DNA of 63,682 bases, counting the filler, from Octopus bimaculoides (taxonomy: Eukaryota): NCBI RefSeq assembly GCF_001194135.2. It is 8 parts of 6 records of this genome, joined end to end, with 100 filler letters (N's around TTAATTAATTAA, not from the genome) between each part and the next. Parts side by side here need not be neighbours in the genome. Positions count along the whole stretch, not along the records: positions 42,499 to 49,859 come from NC_068989.1; 7 more parts are not named here. The stretch is one strand, 5' to 3'. This document shows positions 7,760-50,000 of the stretch, piece by piece; the stretch's first letter is position 1, and the number at the start of each line of letters is the position of its first letter. The translations under genes and the position numbers were made by a program. Under the pieces are notes generated by a model. The model was not told the DNA's origin, ran no database searches, and worked only from the letters and a program-made list of their open reading frames with translations.

Positions 7760-8706
7760 TAAATAGCACTTAAGAAGGCGGGATATAAATATGAAATGAA
7801 GTATGATAAACAAGACAACACTAGTATAAATCATATTAAACAGAATTTGAAAAATAATAAAGTTAAAATTAGTGTATCTAATAAATATAATGAAATAGTA
7901 TATCCTAATAAAGAAATAGCGGAAACTGCCAATAATAGTCATAAACATAACATCATCAGTAAACACGACCATCCTCATTATAATAACAATACAAAACAAC
8001 TTAAGAATTACGAGCAGCACAAGAGAAAGAAAACTTAGAAAAAGAATATAAATCTTAATAATTGCCACCTTCCAAACAACACTAATGTAAACAAACCTAA
8101 AAATACCGCCAACATAAAAATAGAAACATTAAGGCAACAAAGAGAAAAGGCAAGAATAATCAAAATATGACAATTTACTATAATGATATGAATGACCATA
8201 ATACTCTAATTAATAGGGATAGGAACAACATAGTAAAAGAGAAATCTATACCATGTATGAGAAAAATTGACTCTCTGAATACAACCCAATTCTTTATCAA
8301 AGCAGGCCAACGAGAAAACAATTTGGTTAATTCCATTGCAAAACACTTAAAAGCGAAATTTATTAGATCCATCAGAATGGTTATTAATAAAAACTTCAAA
8401 GCATTAAATACGGAAAACTATTTAATAATAAACGTATTAGATTTGGATTTTCAGTTTCTCCTAATCATTTTAGGATAATATCTTCATTTAACCATAAGAA
8501 ACAAGATCAGTTCTATCAAAACAAAATTACTAAAACTGAACCTAGGACCGCCAATAATATTATTAAAATACCGAATAATCCTGCAATTAAAAATATCAAT
8601 ACTAATAATTATAACACTACTACACCACCCACAAATACAAATTGCAATTGCTGAGACCCTAATGTAAATTCGAAAGAAATTATAAAAGGAAAGACATTAT
8701 GTACCA

Positions 8707-41957: not shown

Positions 41958-44542
41958 ATCGCAGAAGTATATTTAATTGAAATCAAATATTTGAACAAAT
42001 TATCTTAACTTTCTAAATAGTTGTGAATTAATCTAGACTCGCATACGTTTCAAAAACACTCTATAAACGACCTCATATCAATTCTTTGTTTTTTTTATGA
42101 GTTATATACAGAGAAACAAAATCATTCGTGGCATTTCATGTTATTCTGTTATTTATCTATTTCTGGTTGTTCGCTGATCGCCTCAGCCTCCCTTCACCCC
42201 TACTACCACCATCATTACCTCTGTCACAACCACTACAAACATTAGCATCGCCGTCACCACCACCACCTCCACCACCATCACCATCCAGCACCACTACTAT
42301 CGCCGCCGCCGCCGCCACCACCACCACCACCACCACCAGGCCGTTGTATGTTCGCCATTTGTCAACCAATATGAAAACAAAACTCACTTTTGTTTATGNN
42401 NNNNNNNNNNNNNNNNNNNNNNNNNNNNNNNNNNNNNNNNNNTTAATTAATTAANNNNNNNNNNNNNNNNNNNNNNNNNNNNNNNNNNNNNNNNNNNNAT
42501 ATATATATATATATACCTGTGTGTGGGAGTCAGTGTGTGTGTGTATGAATGTGTGCGTGCGTGTGTGTCTGTGTTTGTCCCCCACAGCCGGTTGACAACT
42601 GGTTTTAATGTGTTTAAGTACTCGAAATTTGGTAGTCCGTCGAAAGAACCCGAGAGGATAAGTACCAGGCTTAAGATTATTGGGTTCGAGTCATTGGGTT
42701 AAAAGTTCTTCAAAGCGATGGCCTAGCATGGCCGCCGTCTAATGATTGAAACAGTTAAAAGATAAAATATAAGATATATTTATGTACGTATATATATATA
42801 TATATATAGTTCATATGTATATATCTGTATATATGTATATGTATGGATATGTATATATGTGAATATATATGTGTATATATATTTATATAAACACACACAC
42901 ACACATATATATATATTAGATTATGTACAAGTAAGATACTGAGGTGGAAAATACCAAAATACTCAAGTTTGCTTCACAAGCAGGTAAAACAAATTACTAC
43001 CTTAAAATATCAATCTTCAATCCTAGCAAGAATGCTACACACACTCGACATGTAGTAATAGATAAAATGAAATTTCTCATCTAGGCAAATTAATAACCAA
43101 CTGCAAATCTTCCGTTATATAAGAGGGAAAGAAAAACATCACCACTTCTTAAACTGTGGGAAACTTCCTCAATTTACTCTTTGTTCGAAGATCTACCACA
43201 AAATAGATCAACGTTTCCTCAGGTAAACATCTAAGCTAAAGAAACTGGCACTAACTAGAAATCGATGAAGTATTTTATGACAGATGGTGTAATAATACGA
43301 TACTAGTTTTCTCACAATATATTCATAATAATGTCAGTAAGGAAATATGAAAATATATAGCTTCACTTCAGTGTCCGTGGTTAAATACTTATAGTCACTT
43401 TGATATCTCAGATGATACAATACACAATTGAAAGCGTTATGCAAACGCTATGTGTATTCCTTTTTATCACACAGCTATGCTGGTAGTTCAATTGTTGTAG
43501 TTGCACCCAAGGCTTGATTTTGTAAATCACTCACTCGTTACCGTGGCATTAGAGTTGGCGTATCTTAGGCTGTAGCTTAGACTATACATCTCGATGGATC
43601 CCATCCTCCTTTAAGCTGAATCTAAGATGCAGCTAATGAGCTGTACTCATTAACGAAAGCTAATGAAATACTAATCAAATCTATCGAACTGTCACTGATT
43701 ACTATGGTAAAGTAAAATCCTCACCTTGCTACTTAGGTATTGCTGAAAGTATTGTGAAGCGAATTATTTTATTAGCCAAGGGCAGAGTACATTAAAAGAC
43801 ATATCGGAGAATCTTATTGATTTAGTTTATCTGCTACTTCGAATTTGAGGTAGCCATTAGCAAAATGTTGCAATCTATATGATCTATCTGGAAACCTTGA
43901 TTGTGAAACTGATATGATTTTGTAGTAACTAGATCAAACACAAAATAAAAGAATATAAAGATGAACAGGCATAAATGGATTCGGTTATAATATGGAAGTC
44001 AGCAATACTGTTAAAAGCTGTACATGAATATACGCCACTATACGTTGCAGAATATTGTAGGTGAGTCATTTAACGCAAAACTGACGCACTCCTTGCTATG
44101 TAGACTTTATACTAATCCACTTTGTAACGTCAAATACACGCATTCACATTAACAAAAGTGCCAATTTCGGCCGTTTTGCTTTCCAATTATGTTTGTACTT
44201 CATTATGATTATATCTCACTATCTGTTGACTCATAGCAGGGTTGGGGGTAACATATGAATTTTTTGCATCGTGTAATGCTTATCTGTTAGGGAAAAATTA
44301 CATTTATGAAAAGTATTATCATGCTTTATTCTAACTTTTTTTTTATTCTTGCACTGAGTTTAGTGTCTTCAGAAGTTTTAATCGATTACCTCAATACCAA
44401 TACTTATTATACTGTAGTAATACTTTATCGATATCAAATTTTCAAATCTCTAAGTTAAGTTTTTTAAAACCGGTATTGTGCTGAAGGTGTAAAAACAAAC
44501 ATGAAAATATGGTTGGTGACATATAATATTATATATATATAT

Positions 44543-44764
44543 ATTGTGGAGATGTACTTGCATAGCAAGTGACCTGATCTGAGATCGTGTGCTGGAACGA
44601 AAACAATTGCAGCGTGGAAGGTGTTTATAAGACATTTAAAATAACACACAAAAACCGTTAGATTCACTTCAACATTTAAATTTAATTTGTCAAAATACTT
44701 TCGTCGCTTTGAGACCGCGACCTGTTCACTGACAAAGTTCTGTGCTGCTTCTGTATTGTGTGTA
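44543..44764 (-). mobile_element. Interspersed repeat (probable Penelope-type terminal repeat) hosting the variant hammerhead
   Basis: Complex sequence between a (TA)n tract and an N gap. The assignment is inferred from the embedded hammerhead fold and the microsatellite flank. Confidence 0.45.
44686..44736 (-). ncRNA. Minimal type I hammerhead-like ribozyme with a swapped G3:C8 core
   Basis: Minus strand reads TTTGTCA-GTGAACA-G-GTCGC-GGTCTCAAA-GCGAC-GAAA-GTAT-T-T-TGACAAA. It has a 7-bp stem I, a 5-bp stem II closed by G10.1:C11.1, GAAA, a self-complementary AGTATT stem III and a UUU triplet. Confidence 0.65.
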
Positions 44765-46788
44765 NNNNNNNNNNNNNNNNNNNNNNNNNNNNNNNNNNNN
44801 NNNNNNNNNNNNNNNNNNNNNNNNNNNNNNNNNNNNNNNNNNNNNNNNNNNNNNNNNNNNNNNNNNNNNNNNNNNNNNNNNNNNNNNNNNNNNNNNNNNN
44901 NNNNNNNNNNNNNNNNNNNNNNNNNNNNNNNNNNNNNNNNNNNNNNNNNNNNNNNNNNNNNNNNNNNNNNNNNNNNNNNNNNNNNNNNNNNNNNNNNNNN
45001 NNNNNNNNNNNNNNNNNNNNNNNNNNNNNNNNNNNNNNNNNNNNNNNNNNNNNNNNNNNNNNNNNNNNNNNNNNNNNNNNNNNNNNNNNNNNNNNNNNNN
45101 NNNNNNNNNNNNNNNNNNNNNNNNNNNNNNNNNNNNNNNNNNNNNNNNNNNNNNNNNNNNNNNNNNNNNNNNNNNNNNNNNNNNNNNNNNNNNNNNNNNN
45201 NNNNNNNNNNNNNNNNNNNNNNNNNNNNNNNNNNNNNNNNNNNNNNNNNNNNNNNNNNNNNNNNNNNNNNNNNNNNNNNNNNNNNNNNNNNNNNNNNNNN
45301 NNNNNNNNNNNNNNNNNNNNNNNNNNNNNNNNNNNNNNNNNNNNNNNNNNNNNNNNNNNNNNNNNNNNNNNNNNNNNNNNNNNNNNNNNNNNNNNNNNNN
45401 NNNNNNNNNNNNNNNNNNNNNNNNNNNNNNNNNNNNNNNNNNNNNNNNNNNNNNNNNNNNNNNNNNNNNNNNNNNNNNNNNNNNNNNNNNNNNNNNNNNN
45501 NNNNNNNNNNNNNNNNNNNNNNNNNNNNNNNNNNNNNNNNNNNNNNNNNNNNNNNNNNNNNNNNNNNNNNNNNNNNNNNNNNNNNNNNNNNNNNNNNNNN
45601 NNNNNNNNNNNNNNNNNNNNNNNNNNNNNNNNNNNNNNNNNNNNNNNNNNNNNNNNNNNNNNNNNNNNNNNNNNNNNNNNNNNNNNNNNNNNNNNNNNNN
45701 NTATATATATATATATATATATTAAAATTAATCAAGGACATACTAAGTATGTCTACTTGCTTGAAATAACAGTCAAAACTCGTTATTAAATCGCCGAAAA
45801 ATACACTGGTGATAACTACAGAAATCAAACGAAGGCAAATTTGGTTAAGACAATCTACTTACAAACATTTAAGTATTTAGATTCACGTGGACTAGTTTCT
45901 GCATTGGCACAATATGCCCTATCTTCTTCAACATGCATTGCCAGGATAAGAGATTCCCAACCTATCCTTCTGAACTCTGTGCCGCTACTGATTCGCTTCG
46001 CGCCGAAATCACAGCAGCTTCCCAAAGTAAAATAATCTCGTTACAGTATTACGAGAAAAATAATTTATTAATCCCTCGGCTATCTAAATGCTACTTTTTG
46101 GCCTGCTGTCGCTTGTCTCGTTGATTCTGTTATTATCATTCTTAAATTAGTCACATTAACGATACCTTTGTAAATTAATTATATATATCATACGCACATA
46201 CACAGACATACATATGTTTATATATGACGACGGCTTCTGATCATGATTTCCGTTTACCAAATTCTGCCTAACACAGTATTAGTCAGTTTCCAGATTAACA
46301 TAAAAGATTCTTGATCAAAGTTATTTGCAGTGGGATTGCGCCTGAAACTCTTTACTTGAGATGTAAATTTCTTAACCACGTAGTAATGTTTGCACCATAA
46401 CAAAAAGGAAAATACACACTTGAAAATTATATATATTACTCCTTAGCTAAGAACGCTCTTTGAAGGGGATACAGTATCCTATCGAATTGATCAGCTGTAA
46501 CTTTTATGGATAGTATTGATCTATTATATGCACGTAAGCACACATATTAGAGAAAACGGTGTAACCAATTGAATCGATATCGGAACGATGTAAAGCGACA
46601 TCGAGCCCAGTGACTTTTGAACGCAGAGTATAAAAGTGATTGAGATAAACGCTTGCGTTTCTACACTGTTTGTTCTGAATTATTTCACGTTCGACCAATG
46701 AATTGTATTTACTTCAGTGCAAGCTTAAATTTAATTTTAATCTGAATCAATAATCTCGGAGATTCACTGAGATAAACTTCTGAAGCAA

Positions 46789-47010
46789 TACGTGGTGTTA
46801 TTGAAATGTTCCTGGCTTTGGATAAAAGAATGTAGAACAGAATCAGCTAATTATGTTTTTATCCAATATATCCCCCTCTCAGATTCACTCACTTATTGCA
46901 GGGATCCTCCAGTTGTCTAAGTCCTGTAAAAGAACTCGGAAGTTTGGACCTCGAATCAAGCCTTTCGCGATACCCTTAAATCCAGAAACTTTCCAGCACT
47001 CCCTCATGTA
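46789..47010. mobile_element. Mariner-type MITE, decayed
   Basis: Imperfect TA-flanked TIRs: TACGTGGTGTTATTGAAATGTTCCTGGCTTT versus reverse-complement TACATGAGGGAGTGCTGGAAAGTTTCTGGATTT. Confidence 0.5.
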
Positions 47011-50000
47011 GGTCCCCTGTTTAACTGGATGTTGTTAGAGTTCATTGCCGACTTCATTGAAATGAATTTGGTCTAACAGGATTATTGGGAACTACCTGCA
47101 TGTTTGCTACCATCTTCATAAACGTAGACTCCTGCTTCTGTTTGGTGAAATATGCACTGGAAAATTAGAGCAGCGGCAATTTTTTTGGAGCATGCAAGCT
47201 ACATTGTCAATATAGGCAAACTTACAGATTTTCGATGATATTTAAAGAGAGGAAAGGTAAGATTTAAGATAAATTAGAACACTTAATTTGTAATAGATAA
47301 TTAAATTTTATATTAAACATTTATATTATAATGACAGAATTCAATATGGAATTTTTAATTTAGTGGTTGGCAGTGAGGCTACAGATTCGATAGACCTGAA
47401 TTGGTAGCACCTTGCGTATTTTAGCTAAGTTTCTTCGTGATATAGCTTTTACTTTTCGGTTCTCCTCGGTTCTTTGTTGAACCTATAAATTAAACATCAA
47501 TCAAGTATTGACATCTGAATAACTGACCGTACCCAGCTCCTAAAGTTCATTGCCAGAATGTTAGTTCTGTATCGTGGCGTTGTAACTTGAAATAATAACA
47601 TATTCATCAGACATCATCACGATAAACGTTTCCCGTCTGGCGAAGAGAGAATAAGTACCAGTGATATATTAAATTTTGTTTAATATATTGAAGTTGCTTT
47701 TATTGCTTTGCACAGAAACTGGACGTGTGCCTAATAGACAGAAAATCAATTATGTTACTCGGTTGTTTATACAAGTTGATTGAAGTTAGTTACTAATTAG
47801 ATATGAATCTGTGACTGGCTCATAAATTAGGCAGCAGATAACATTTTAATGTGTTAAGTTGAGAGAGAAAGTCATTTGAATATTGTACTCACAGCGTATT
47901 AACACGACAAAGGCATTGGAGAATAAATAATATATATGTGCTTAGATAAGAGAACAATTCAAATTCAATGTAGGTAATTATCTGAAGAAAACTAAAATAT
48001 ATTTGAAATCGCTATAACTGACAAGTGTAACAAACAACATTTTTCACAAACACCTGATTATCCGACGCTTGTTTTCCTCACTAATGTATAAACTGGAAAC
48101 CTTCCAAAAAAAGAATGATATAATGTATCTTTATTATTTAAGGATAACCTTTCGGACTTTAAAAGATGTAATTGTTTGAAATTCTCTTGTGAAAAAACAA
48201 AAAAAACAAAAACAAAGGAATATGTCAGATAAATATGTACAAAAGAAAAGCTAACTGAAACAACAGCAAGTATCGTTTGTTATTTCCAGTGTTGAAGATT
48301 ATGAGATAGTTTAGCACTTTATTAACTGTTAAAATATAACTTAACAATTTGTACACATTATTCAAAGAATTTCTGCCTACAGCAGAAAGTATATTACCTG
48401 ATTAATGACAAGCAGAAGAGAAATAAAATAAATGCAATTATCTATTTATGCGTGAATCTTTCACTTTCTTTAAGCTGCCTTACCTTTGAAGTTAGCTAGT
48501 TGCATGTATGATAGAGTTAAAACATTTTCCGCTCATGTAAGTCTATGCAGTATATTGCGGTGAGGAATGCAGAGCAGGAGATAATGTGGAGGTGATGAAA
48601 GATCATAACACTGTTTCGATTCTCGTATGTGCATTAATTTTTGTCACGTTGCTAATATCTGAAAAAACGTTGAATTGCGTAATGTCGGACTATATCAATT
48701 CTAGAAAAAATAAAAAGCATTATATTGTGACGAGAAGAATTTAACAAATGGTAAACTTCTTGCAATGATTAACTTTGAACTTACAAATATGCATTCCAAA
48801 TTCAGTATATCGCCTTTCATCATAAGACTAACTCCGTATATGGCCATAAATCACTTGCGAATGTATGAAACTCGCAATAGTTACGTAGGGGAGATTTTTA
48901 AGTGATAATTTGTGGATATTGTAACGAGTTGTAAAAATAAGATAGCAAAATATTTCTAAGATAACGAAAGGAAAATAGAAACGTTATGAATTACTACCGA
49001 TGTTTAGCCATAGATGAGTTTTGATTGAATAAATCTATAGAAGGTCTGTAAAAGGTCTGTAGAATATTTATAGAAAGTTTATAGAAAGTACTTCTGATGT
49101 TACCAATCTGTGCTGCCTTACTTCTGGGTATACAATAGAATATGTCTTACCTTTATATTTAAATATGGCAGGGTGTGATACGAGTTAGATTTAGCAATTA
49201 TTTCTTGCAGCTCGACTGATCAGTTAGAGGTATTTGCATCAACATTAGTTGCAGCTTATTGGATTGACAATTTGTCAGTGTACGGAGAGATATAACCATA
49301 TAACCACGGTTTATATCTTAAAAACGACACCGTACAAGTCACATTGAAATAACACTCGACTATTGATGGCATGTCAGAATAGCTGAAAATGTGTGTACCT
49401 CGTAGCGCGAAAGAACGTAATAAGCATTTAAAAGAACGAAACGCTTGAAACTGATGACTGTTTATTTACATTGCCTGAGGTTAGTCAAGATGGTATTTAG
49501 TTCCAGATCGACCTTGAAGAAAGCAAACCTCTGATAGAAAATATTTTATGCGGGCCATGTATTTTAGGGATATTTAGAACAATTTTAAATAAGTATTTTA
49601 AATAAAACCATGATAAACTCTAGGCAAAGATTTTGTAGCTGCGACATACCGCGGTATTTTTAGACGTTGTATATTTTGGAACACATTATACAATGCATCC
49701 TTTCCCCATTTTTTATAACGATAGGAGACCGCACTGATATTTACAAAAACGTGAGAACTCGAATATTTTAAATGCACCAAACAGTACCGATATATTTCTT
49801 TGTAGGAAAGAGCAACATAAACGAGCATCTCTGCTTTAAGACAGTATATATATATATATNNNNNNNNNNNNNNNNNNNNNNNNNNNNNNNNNNNNNNNNN
49901 NNNTTAATTAATTAANNNNNNNNNNNNNNNNNNNNNNNNNNNNNNNNNNNNNNNNNNNNTATATATATATATATATATATATATCTGTCTTTCTTTAATC

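What the first reader, a model, noticed from the sequence alone, without database searches (positions are those of the whole stretch)
44686..44736. Hammerhead ribozyme fold with a natural compensatory G3:C8 core swap
The minus strand has complete hammerhead topology: a perfect 7-bp stem I, a perfect 5-bp stem II with the G10.1:C11.1 closing pair, GAAA and U16.1-H17. The core is GUGAACA rather than CUGANGA. The two changed positions, 3 and 8, are exactly those that form a tertiary Watson-Crick pair (Martick and Scott 2006), and the engineered G3:C8 double swap is known to rescue activity. Stem III has no room for a loop but is self-complementary (AGUAUU, two G:U), as in dimer-acting Penelope-associated hammerheads, and the extra nucleotide after A9 recurs in other relics here. 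If this repeat is abundant, it is a ribozyme family that standard CUGANGA searches would miss. Whether it has been described is unknown to me; activity is inferred, and the UUU triplet is suboptimal.
Basis: partly seen in the sequence, partly recalled or inferred. Interest (0 to 1): 0.9.

Follow-up and report, generated by a model that had tools for sequence, protein, structure and literature searches.

The report
Hammerhead-like motif with swapped core pair
A 51-base stretch folds on paper exactly like the small, dimer-acting hammerhead ribozymes of Penelope-like retrotransposons, but with one core base pair flipped (G3:C8 instead of C3:G8). I could see only this one copy, so whether it is a working new variant, a dead relic or a coincidence is still open.

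Summary
On the minus strand, 44736..44686 reads UUUGUCA|GUGAACA|G|GUCGC-GGUCUCAAA-GCGAC|GAA|AGUAUU|U|UGACAAA. That gives a perfect 7-bp helix I, a perfect 5-bp helix II closed by G10.1:C11.1, GAAA, A15.1/U16.1, U17, one unpaired base after A9 and a self-complementary helix III.

This architecture is already described: it is the type-I "minimal" hammerhead of Penelope-like elements (PLEs) and animal retrozymes. Natural covariation at 3:8 is also known, but only as U3:A8. The G3:C8 state is the only possibly new part.

With all consensus features required, a Markov null expects about 1e-6 (G3:C8) to 1e-4 (any core with two or fewer changes) per 50-kb window, so pure chance is unlikely but not excluded.

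The motif lies 147 nt from an element-like end that abuts a (TA)n tract. An assembly gap sits on its other side, and the far side of that gap starts with (TA)n, as expected for a PLE insertion.

Four things count against a working family:
- I could reach no second copy.
- Helix III is very weak (-0.2 kcal/mol).
- UUU is a poor cleavage triplet.
- Rfam gives no hit, though it also misses a genuine PLE hammerhead.

Weights: compensated hammerhead variant about 0.5, chance about 0.3, dead relic about 0.15. Interest is moderate.

The parts
44730..44736 (-). Helix I, 5' strand (UUUGUCA; positions 2.7-2.1)
   Evidence: Seven Watson-Crick pairs with 44686-44692. Kept in the minimum-free-energy folds.
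44723..44729 (-). Core box GUGAACA (G3 U4 G5 A6 A7 C8 A9). Differs from CUGANGA at positions 3 and 8 only.
   Evidence: It is the only GUGANCA...CGAAA match in the piece.
44722..44722 (-). Unpaired G between A9 and G10.1
   Evidence: This is a stated hallmark of PLE minimal hammerheads (PMC4209133). The same bulge is present in the Anolis consensus and in the Podarcis copy L032:8959.
44703..44721 (-). Helix II (GUCGC/GCGAC, closed by G10.1:C11.1) with the 9-nt loop GGUCUCAAA
44700..44702 (-). G12 A13 A14
44694..44699 (-). Helix III element AGUAUU (A15.1...U16.1). Within one molecule it gives 2 bp plus a 2-nt loop (UA). Between two copies it gives 6 bp with two G.U pairs.
   Evidence: The duplex energy is -0.2 kcal/mol.
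44693..44693 (-). U17. The predicted cleavage is 3' of this base, so the new 5' end would be at 44692.
   Evidence: Inferred from the hammerhead numbering applied. Not tested.
44686..44692 (-). Helix I, 3' strand (UGACAAA; positions 1.1-1.7)
44546..44685 (-). 140 nt downstream of the motif. It ends in two small hairpins and an AC-rich tail (..GUACAUCUCCACAA) directly against (TA)n. Proposed as the 3' end of a retroelement insertion.
   Evidence: The geometry is like the Anolis PLE, where reverse transcription starts in an AC-rich stem-loop about 85-130 nt past the cut site and the copy lands in AT-rich DNA (PMC11167929). This is an inference.
44521..44545 (.). (TA)n tract on the left of the proposed insertion
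44765..45701 (.). Assembly gap of 937 N that hides everything upstream of the motif on the minus strand
45702..45724 (.). (TA)n tract directly on the far side of the gap. It may be the other half of a split microsatellite target.
   Evidence: (TA)n is a preferred PLE target (PMC8557442), but (TA)n tracts are common in this piece.

Best explanation
The motif descends from the type-I, dimer-acting minimal hammerheads carried by Penelope-like retroelements and their non-autonomous derivatives (animal retrozymes). It sits about 150 nt from the 3' end of a minus-strand insertion into a (TA)n tract, and most of that insertion is hidden by the assembly gap. Its source copy carried a compensatory flip of the C3:G8 tertiary pair to G3:C8.

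Proposed mechanism (inferred, not shown): in a transcript holding two or more copies, or with help from the element's protein, two motifs pair through AGUAUU to build helix III. The G3:C8 pair holds the core together. The 2'-OH of residue 8 and G12 carry out acid-base catalysis. The RNA is cut 3' of U17, between 44693 and 44692.

I expect the rate to be low, for three reasons: the swapped pair rescues activity only partly, helix III is very weak, and UUU is a poor triplet.
For: 1. All non-swapped consensus features are present and both helices are perfect.
2. The features that Cervera and de la Pena list as hallmarks of real PLE hammerheads are all here: a base between 9 and 10.1, G10.1-C11.1, and palindromic 15.2-16.2 with loop 3. 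Genuine PLE copies show the same layout (Anolis consensus; Podarcis L032:8959 and 17648).
3. With those features required, the chance expectation is 1e-6 to 1e-4 per 50-kb window.
4. The only two core changes fall on the two bases that pair with each other, and they stay complementary. If two unselected substitutions were spread at random over the 51 nt, this exact outcome would have odds of roughly 1 in 10,000 (my arithmetic).
5. The C3G/G8C double mutant partly restores cleavage in a PLE hammerhead. A 3:8 covariant, U3:A8, is abundant in nature.
6. The context fits an insertion: (TA)n on both outer sides, an assembly gap, and an AC-rich hairpin-bearing end 147 nt past the cut site. PLEs target AT-rich and (TA)n DNA and disturb assemblies.
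7. U17 avoids the G3-C17 mispairing trap implied by PMC3884650. This last point is speculative.
Against: - Only one copy is visible. There is no other copy in the piece and none in the metagenome, genome or viral collections or by the protein route. None of those collections is expected to hold this eukaryotic genome.
- No RT/GIY-YIG reading frame is visible, and no ORF starts at helix II as it does in Poseidon-type PLEs.
- Helix I (7 bp) is longer and helix II (5 bp) shorter than in typical PLE minimal hammerheads.
- The intermolecular helix III is about -0.2 kcal/mol.
- The minimum-free-energy fold pairs A7-C8 with G15.2-U15.3, which competes with the active fold.
- The 219-nt segment is not unusually structured (z = +1.0).
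- Going from C:G to G:C needs two transversions with no wobble intermediate, and each single mutant is inactive. This makes the swap a rare evolutionary event, and I found no report of a natural case.
- (TA)n tracts are frequent in this piece, so the 'split target' may be coincidence.
Confidence: 0.5

Rival explanations
1. Chance look-alike. Two nested short inverted repeats next to a GAAA in AT-rich non-coding DNA happen to mimic a hammerhead. A reader who would accept any two core changes and find a story for them picked it out.
For: - With the core relaxed to two or fewer mismatches, and only the stems required, 0.09 such motifs are expected per 50-kb window. A multi-gigabase genome would hold thousands.
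- The string GUGAACAGGUCGC...GCGACGAAA on its own occurs by chance in at least 7 unrelated GC-rich bacterial contigs.
- No second copy was found.
- No Rfam hit.
- The fold z-score is only -2.35.
- Real genomes are richer in hairpins than a Markov null.
Against: - Once the a-priori consensus features are required, the expectation drops to 1.3e-4 per window for any core with two or fewer mismatches, and to 1e-6 for G3:C8. Those features are G10.1:C11.1, A15.1:U16.1, H17, a self-complementary helix III and 7+5 perfect pairs.
- There were zero hits of even the loose descriptor in 72 kb (single strand) of real animal DNA.
- The two deviations fall exactly on the one core pair known to tolerate a swap.
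- The Rfam negative carries no weight, because Rfam also misses a genuine PLE hammerhead.
Confidence: 0.3
2. Dead relic. A canonical C3:G8 retroelement hammerhead copy picked up two unselected substitutions after insertion, or in a lineage that no longer needed cleavage, and is inactive.
For: - Most genomic PLE hammerheads are single, truncated copies.
- Hammerhead cleavage is not needed for PLE insertion in vitro, and PLE clades without hammerheads proliferate well, so selection on the core can lapse.
- The weak helix III and the UUU triplet fit decay.
Against: All 24 stem positions and the other 11 conserved core positions are intact, so the copy does not look decayed. Two random hits landing on 3 and 8 and staying complementary is very improbable.
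Confidence: 0.15

Closest known systems
Minimal type-I hammerheads of Penelope-like elements (min-HHR; Cervera and de la Pena 2014, PMC4209133). Also Lunse, Weinberg and Breaker 2017, RNA Biol 14:1499, cited from reference lists only because the paper itself was not readable here.
   Same: Open helix I; an unpaired base between A9 and G10.1; G10.1-C11.1; GAAA; a tiny palindromic helix III that can only form properly between two copies; a single dispersed copy next to AT-rich DNA; core covariation at 3:8 occurs in this class (U3:A8).
   Different: The core is G3:C8 rather than C3:G8 or U3:A8. Helix I is 7 bp (usual 2-5) and helix II is 5 bp (usual 6-8). No PLE ORF or pLTR is visible, and no ATG sits at the start of helix II.
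Canonical metazoan type-I hammerheads in non-LTR retrozymes and satellite repeats (newt, Schistosoma Sm-alpha, mussel, coral; PMC7229834)
   Same: Helix I of about 6 bp and helix II of about 4 bp; helix III of 1-2 bp capped by a 2-4 nt palindromic loop; dimer-dependent cleavage; low-GC repeat context; a possible tandem array hidden in the assembly gap.
   Different: No recognisable loop 1/loop 2 tertiary contact motif. There is a bulge after A9 and a swapped 3:8 pair. No tandem repeat is seen. The 219-nt segment is not rod-like (z = +1.0).
Engineered C3G/G8C hammerhead double mutants (Martick and Scott 2006, from memory; tested in the Anolis PLE hammerhead, PMC11167929)
   Same: The same two bases are exchanged and keep the Watson-Crick tertiary pair.
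   Different: Those are laboratory constructs with partial rescue. This one is a natural genomic sequence of untested activity.

Membership tests
Hammerhead ribozyme (any type) | Three-way junction: helices I and II flank the core, with helix III between GAA and the cleavage site | tested here: met
   Helices I (7 bp) and II (5 bp) are perfect. Helix III exists only as 2 bp plus a 2-nt loop, or as an intermolecular 6-bp duplex of -0.2 kcal/mol.
Hammerhead ribozyme (any type) | Conserved core C3 U4 G5 A6 N7 G8 A9 ... G12 A13 A14 | tested here: not met
   The core is G3 U4 G5 A6 A7 C8 A9 ... G12 A13 A14. Positions 3 and 8 differ.
Hammerhead ribozyme (any type) | Watson-Crick tertiary pair between positions 3 and 8 | tested here: met
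   G3 and C8 are complementary. Whether they actually pair in three dimensions is inferred from mutant rescue in other hammerheads.
Hammerhead ribozyme (any type) | G10.1:C11.1, A15.1:U16.1, and H (not G) at position 17 | tested here: met
   All are present. Position 17 is U.
Hammerhead ribozyme (any type) | Site-specific self-cleavage giving 2',3'-cyclic phosphate and 5'-OH ends | not testable with these tools
   No RNA data or bench assay was available.
Hammerhead ribozyme (any type) | Match to the Rfam hammerhead covariance models | tested here: inconclusive
   There is no hit at E up to 10, even on 125 nt. A genuine canonical-core PLE hammerhead (L032:8959) also gives no hit, so the models do not cover this subclass.
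PLE-associated minimal hammerhead | Unpaired nucleotide between 9 and 10.1, and palindromic 15.2-16.2 with loop 3 | tested here: met
   G at 44722; AGUAUU is self-complementary with G.U pairs.
PLE-associated minimal hammerhead | Long helix II (6-8 bp) and short helix I (about 2-5 bp) | tested here: not met
   Helix II is 5 bp and helix I is 7 bp. Compare L032, with 6 bp and 2 bp.
PLE-associated minimal hammerhead | Lies in the pseudo-LTR of an element encoding RT plus GIY-YIG endonuclease | not testable with these tools
   The upstream part is a 937-N gap. No ORF longer than 76 aa exists in the visible sequence. Only the distance to an AC-rich end next to (TA)n fits.
PLE-associated minimal hammerhead | Belongs to a multi-copy family that shows compensatory changes in the helices | tested here: inconclusive
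   No other copy in the piece or in the reachable collections. The source genome itself could not be searched.
Metazoan non-LTR retrozyme | Head-to-tail tandem repeats of 150-450 bp, each with one type-I hammerhead | not testable with these tools
   Only one unit edge is visible, and the gap begins 28 nt upstream of the motif.
Metazoan non-LTR retrozyme | Highly self-paired (rod-like) monomer RNA | tested here: not met
   The 219-nt segment has z = +1.0 on the minus strand and +1.4 on the plus strand. The unit may be incomplete.

The most novel reading that the evidence does not exclude
This genome carries an expressed family of dimer-acting, retroelement-borne hammerheads whose catalytic core is fixed as G3:C8. 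That would be the first natural hammerhead with the purine/pyrimidine orientation of the 3:8 pair flipped. The state is reachable only through two transversions across an inactive intermediate, and it is invisible to CUGANGA descriptors and to Rfam.
Probability: 0.3. Interest if true: 0.6.

Novelty: new variant of a known kind. Interest (0 to 1): 0.4.

Why it matters
If a G3:C8 family exists and cleaves, three things would follow.
- It would be natural, evolutionary confirmation that position 8 acts through its sugar and its pairing, not its base identity.
- It would show that retroelement hammerheads can cross a two-transversion fitness valley.
- It would mean that current descriptor and covariance-model censuses of animal hammerheads undercount. 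Rfam already misses the whole PLE minimal class.

If this is a single copy, it is a curiosity with no wider consequence.

Tried and rejected
- Rfam on the whole piece and on 125 nt around the motif gave no hammerhead hit. I rejected this as evidence after the positive control failed in the same way.
- Repeat search, tandem-repeat search and low-stringency blastn of 44546-44764 against the rest of the piece found no second copy.
- Exact-pattern scans of the collections returned only GC-rich chance strings without helix I: metagenome contigs (14 hits), bacterial and archaeal genomes (6 hits) and viral contigs (11 hits), inspected.
- The protein route to Logan/NCBI assemblies failed. The 99-codon open frame across the motif has no relatives, and three ORFs of the piece are not on record.
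- A PLE protein alignment used against viral contigs found nothing.
- A Tenebrio PLE locus (L033) showed no recognisable hammerhead with my loose pattern.
I did not pursue it, since no open stretch exceeds 76 aa.
- The 99-codon open frame on the minus strand is not significant. About 1.7 such stretches are expected in the piece (my arithmetic).
- Several key papers were not held: Przybilski and Hammann 2007, Martick and Scott 2006, Nelson and Uhlenbeck 2008 and Lunse 2017.

Full report
**What is there**

The piece (42499-49859) is AT-rich, microsatellite-rich, non-coding, eukaryote-type DNA. It has a 937-N assembly gap at 44765-45701, no tRNA genes and no ORF above 76 aa.

On the minus strand, 44736..44686 reads UUUGUCA GUGAACA G GUCGC GGUCUCAAA GCGAC GAA AGUAUU U UGACAAA. 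My own descriptor found this and nothing else in the piece, even at loose settings. Its parts are:
- Helix I: 7 Watson-Crick pairs.
- Helix II: 5 Watson-Crick pairs, closed by G10.1:C11.1.
- Core: G12 A13 A14, A15.1, U16.1 and U17 are present.
- One base is unpaired after A9.
- AGUAUU is self-complementary.

The predicted cut is between 44693 and 44692.

**Is it more than chance?**

The 51-mer folds only modestly better than shuffles (z = -2.35).

I used 40 and 96 Mb of first-order Markov sequence with the piece's composition. Expected counts per 100 kb of single strand, which equals one 50-kb window on both strands, are:

| Requirement | Expected count |
|---|---|
| Stems as good as these, any core with two or fewer mismatches | 0.09 |
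| Same, plus the a-priori consensus features (G10.1:C11.1, self-complementary helix III with A15.1:U16.1, H17) | 1.3e-4 |
| Those features with a Watson-Crick swap at 3:8 | 7.7e-6 |
| Those features with G3:C8 | 1.1e-6 (about 0.05 per 2.5-Gb genome) |

The loose figure means thousands of look-alikes per large genome. The full-feature figures multiply the factors as if independent and rest on a simple null, so they could be off by an order of magnitude. The loose descriptor also found nothing in 72 kb of real animal DNA.

The core-plus-helix-II string alone is not diagnostic. It occurs by chance in several GC-rich bacterial contigs.

**What kind of thing it resembles**

Cervera and de la Pena (PMC4209133) defined the type-I hammerheads of animal genomes and the minimal hammerheads of Penelope-like elements (PLEs). 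Their features are:
- helix III of 1-2 bp with a 2-4 nt palindromic loop, or none at all;
- activity as dimers;
- a conserved unpaired base between 9 and 10.1;
- G10.1-C11.1;
- palindromic 15.2-16.2;
- thousands of mostly single, truncated copies per genome;
- low activity in vitro.

The candidate has all of these structural marks.

I checked the layout on real PLEs. The Anolis Poseidon consensus reads CUGAGGA-U-GCCUGC..GUGGGC-GAAA-CGU-C across its tandem junction. A Podarcis locus fetched through a PLE protein search carries CUGAAGA-U-GACGAG..CUCGUC-GAAA-CGU-C twice, in inverted orientation. So the 'extra nucleotide after A9' and the 'stem III with no room for a loop' are the signature of a described class, not anomalies.

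**The Rfam negative means nothing here**

Rfam 15 gives no hammerhead match for the candidate even at E up to 10 on 125 nt. It gives none for the genuine Podarcis PLE hammerhead under the same settings either, nor at the gathering threshold.

**The G3:C8 question**

- Single C3G or G8C changes abolish cleavage. The double change partly restores it, and this was shown in the Anolis PLE hammerhead itself (PMC11167929; review PMC8495972).
- Natural covariation at 3:8 is known, but as U3:A8. It is seen in several bacterial and metagenomic hammerheads (PMC3088659) and in about 1,300 Schistosoma motifs.
- My literature searches found G3:C8 only as an engineered variant. Several key papers were not readable, so 'never seen in nature' is not established.
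- U3:A8 is reachable from C3:G8 by two transitions through a U.G wobble. G3:C8 needs two transversions through a mismatched, inactive intermediate. That would explain its rarity and is what would make a real family notable (my inference).

**Context**

On the minus strand the motif is followed by 140 nt. These end in two small hairpins and an AC-rich tail directly against a (TA)n tract at 44521-44545. Upstream, the sequence runs into the gap after 28 nt, and the far side of the gap starts with (TA)n at 45702-45724.

PLEs prefer (TA)n or AT-rich targets, and they cause assembly problems (PMC8557442). In the Anolis element the cut site is at ORF +26. Reverse transcription starts in an AC-rich stem-loop at +111-118, with an optional 30-40 nt tail, and the copy joins AT-rich DNA. 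That places the element end about 85-130 nt past the cut site. Here the distance is 147 nt.

This fits a roughly 1.15-kb, 5'-truncated or non-autonomous insertion. It is an analogy, though, and (TA)n tracts are frequent in the piece. No RT/GIY-YIG frame is visible, and no ATG sits at helix II as in Poseidon-type elements.

**Points against activity**

- The intermolecular helix III (AGUAUU with itself) is worth about -0.2 kcal/mol, against -4.6 to -7.5 for typical six-base palindromes.
- The minimum-free-energy fold pairs A7-C8 with G15.2-U15.3.
- UUU is a poor triplet (established knowledge, from memory).
- The 219-nt segment is not rod-like as retrozyme RNAs are.
- PLE hammerheads are weak in vitro even with canonical cores, and the Anolis one needs its protein.

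**Copy number, the decisive test, could not be run**

There is no second copy in the piece and no other hammerhead box pair. None of the reachable collections holds the source genome:
- Pattern scans of metagenome, prokaryote-genome and viral contigs returned only chance strings.
- The open frame across the motif has no relatives.
- ORFs of the piece are not on record.

**Verdict**

I weigh the readings as follows:

| Reading | Weight |
|---|---|
| Genuine retroelement-type hammerhead whose source copy carried a compensated G3:C8 core | about 0.5 |
| Chance look-alike | about 0.3 |
| Dead relic with unselected changes | about 0.15 |

I favour compensation over decay because every other constrained position is intact and the two changes fall exactly on the two bases that pair with each other.

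For novelty, at most this is a new variant of a known kind. Interest is 0.4.

Noticed in passing
window 42570-42750: A SINE-like segment with a tRNA-type B box (GGTTCGAGTC at about 42684) and an A/T-rich tail, sitting between TG/TA microsatellites. A short related string (GAGAGAATAAGTACCAG) recurs at about 47640-47662.
   Followed up: no
window 42778-42916: Rfam sub-threshold hits to mir-297, mir-466, mir-3149 and mir-1277 (best 48 bits against a gathering score of 90) all fall on TA/TG/CA microsatellite. I take them as low-complexity artefacts.
   Followed up: partly
window 44765-45701: A 937-N assembly gap bordered on the right by (TA)n. The sequence that would decide the finding (tandem copy or retroelement body) lies inside it.
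   Followed up: no
L032 8959-9012 (+) and 17648-17701 (-): A Podarcis muralis PLE locus carries two identical canonical minimal hammerheads in inverted orientation, with the ATG of the PLE frame at the start of helix II. Rfam 15 detects neither, so the PLE minimal class is outside the current Rfam hammerhead models.
   Followed up: partly
L004 (minus strand, about 8548-8595 in reverse-complement coordinates); L015-L020: GC-rich bacterial contigs contain the exact string GTGAACAGGTCGC...GCGACGAAA. L004 even has a 5-bp helix-I-like pairing. These are chance look-alikes that show how little the core plus helix II proves on its own.
   Followed up: partly
L025 71-99: A 403-kb IMG/VR contig carries CUGAGGA-U-GUCGC..GCGAC-GAAAC with a canonical core. 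However, there is no U16.1/H17 junction that I could place and no Rfam hit at the gathering threshold, so it is probably chance.
   Followed up: partly
window 44464-44764, minus strand: A 99-codon stop-free frame runs through the motif, the (TA)n tract and into the flank. It has no protein relatives, and a stretch of this length is expected by chance in the piece.
   Followed up: yes
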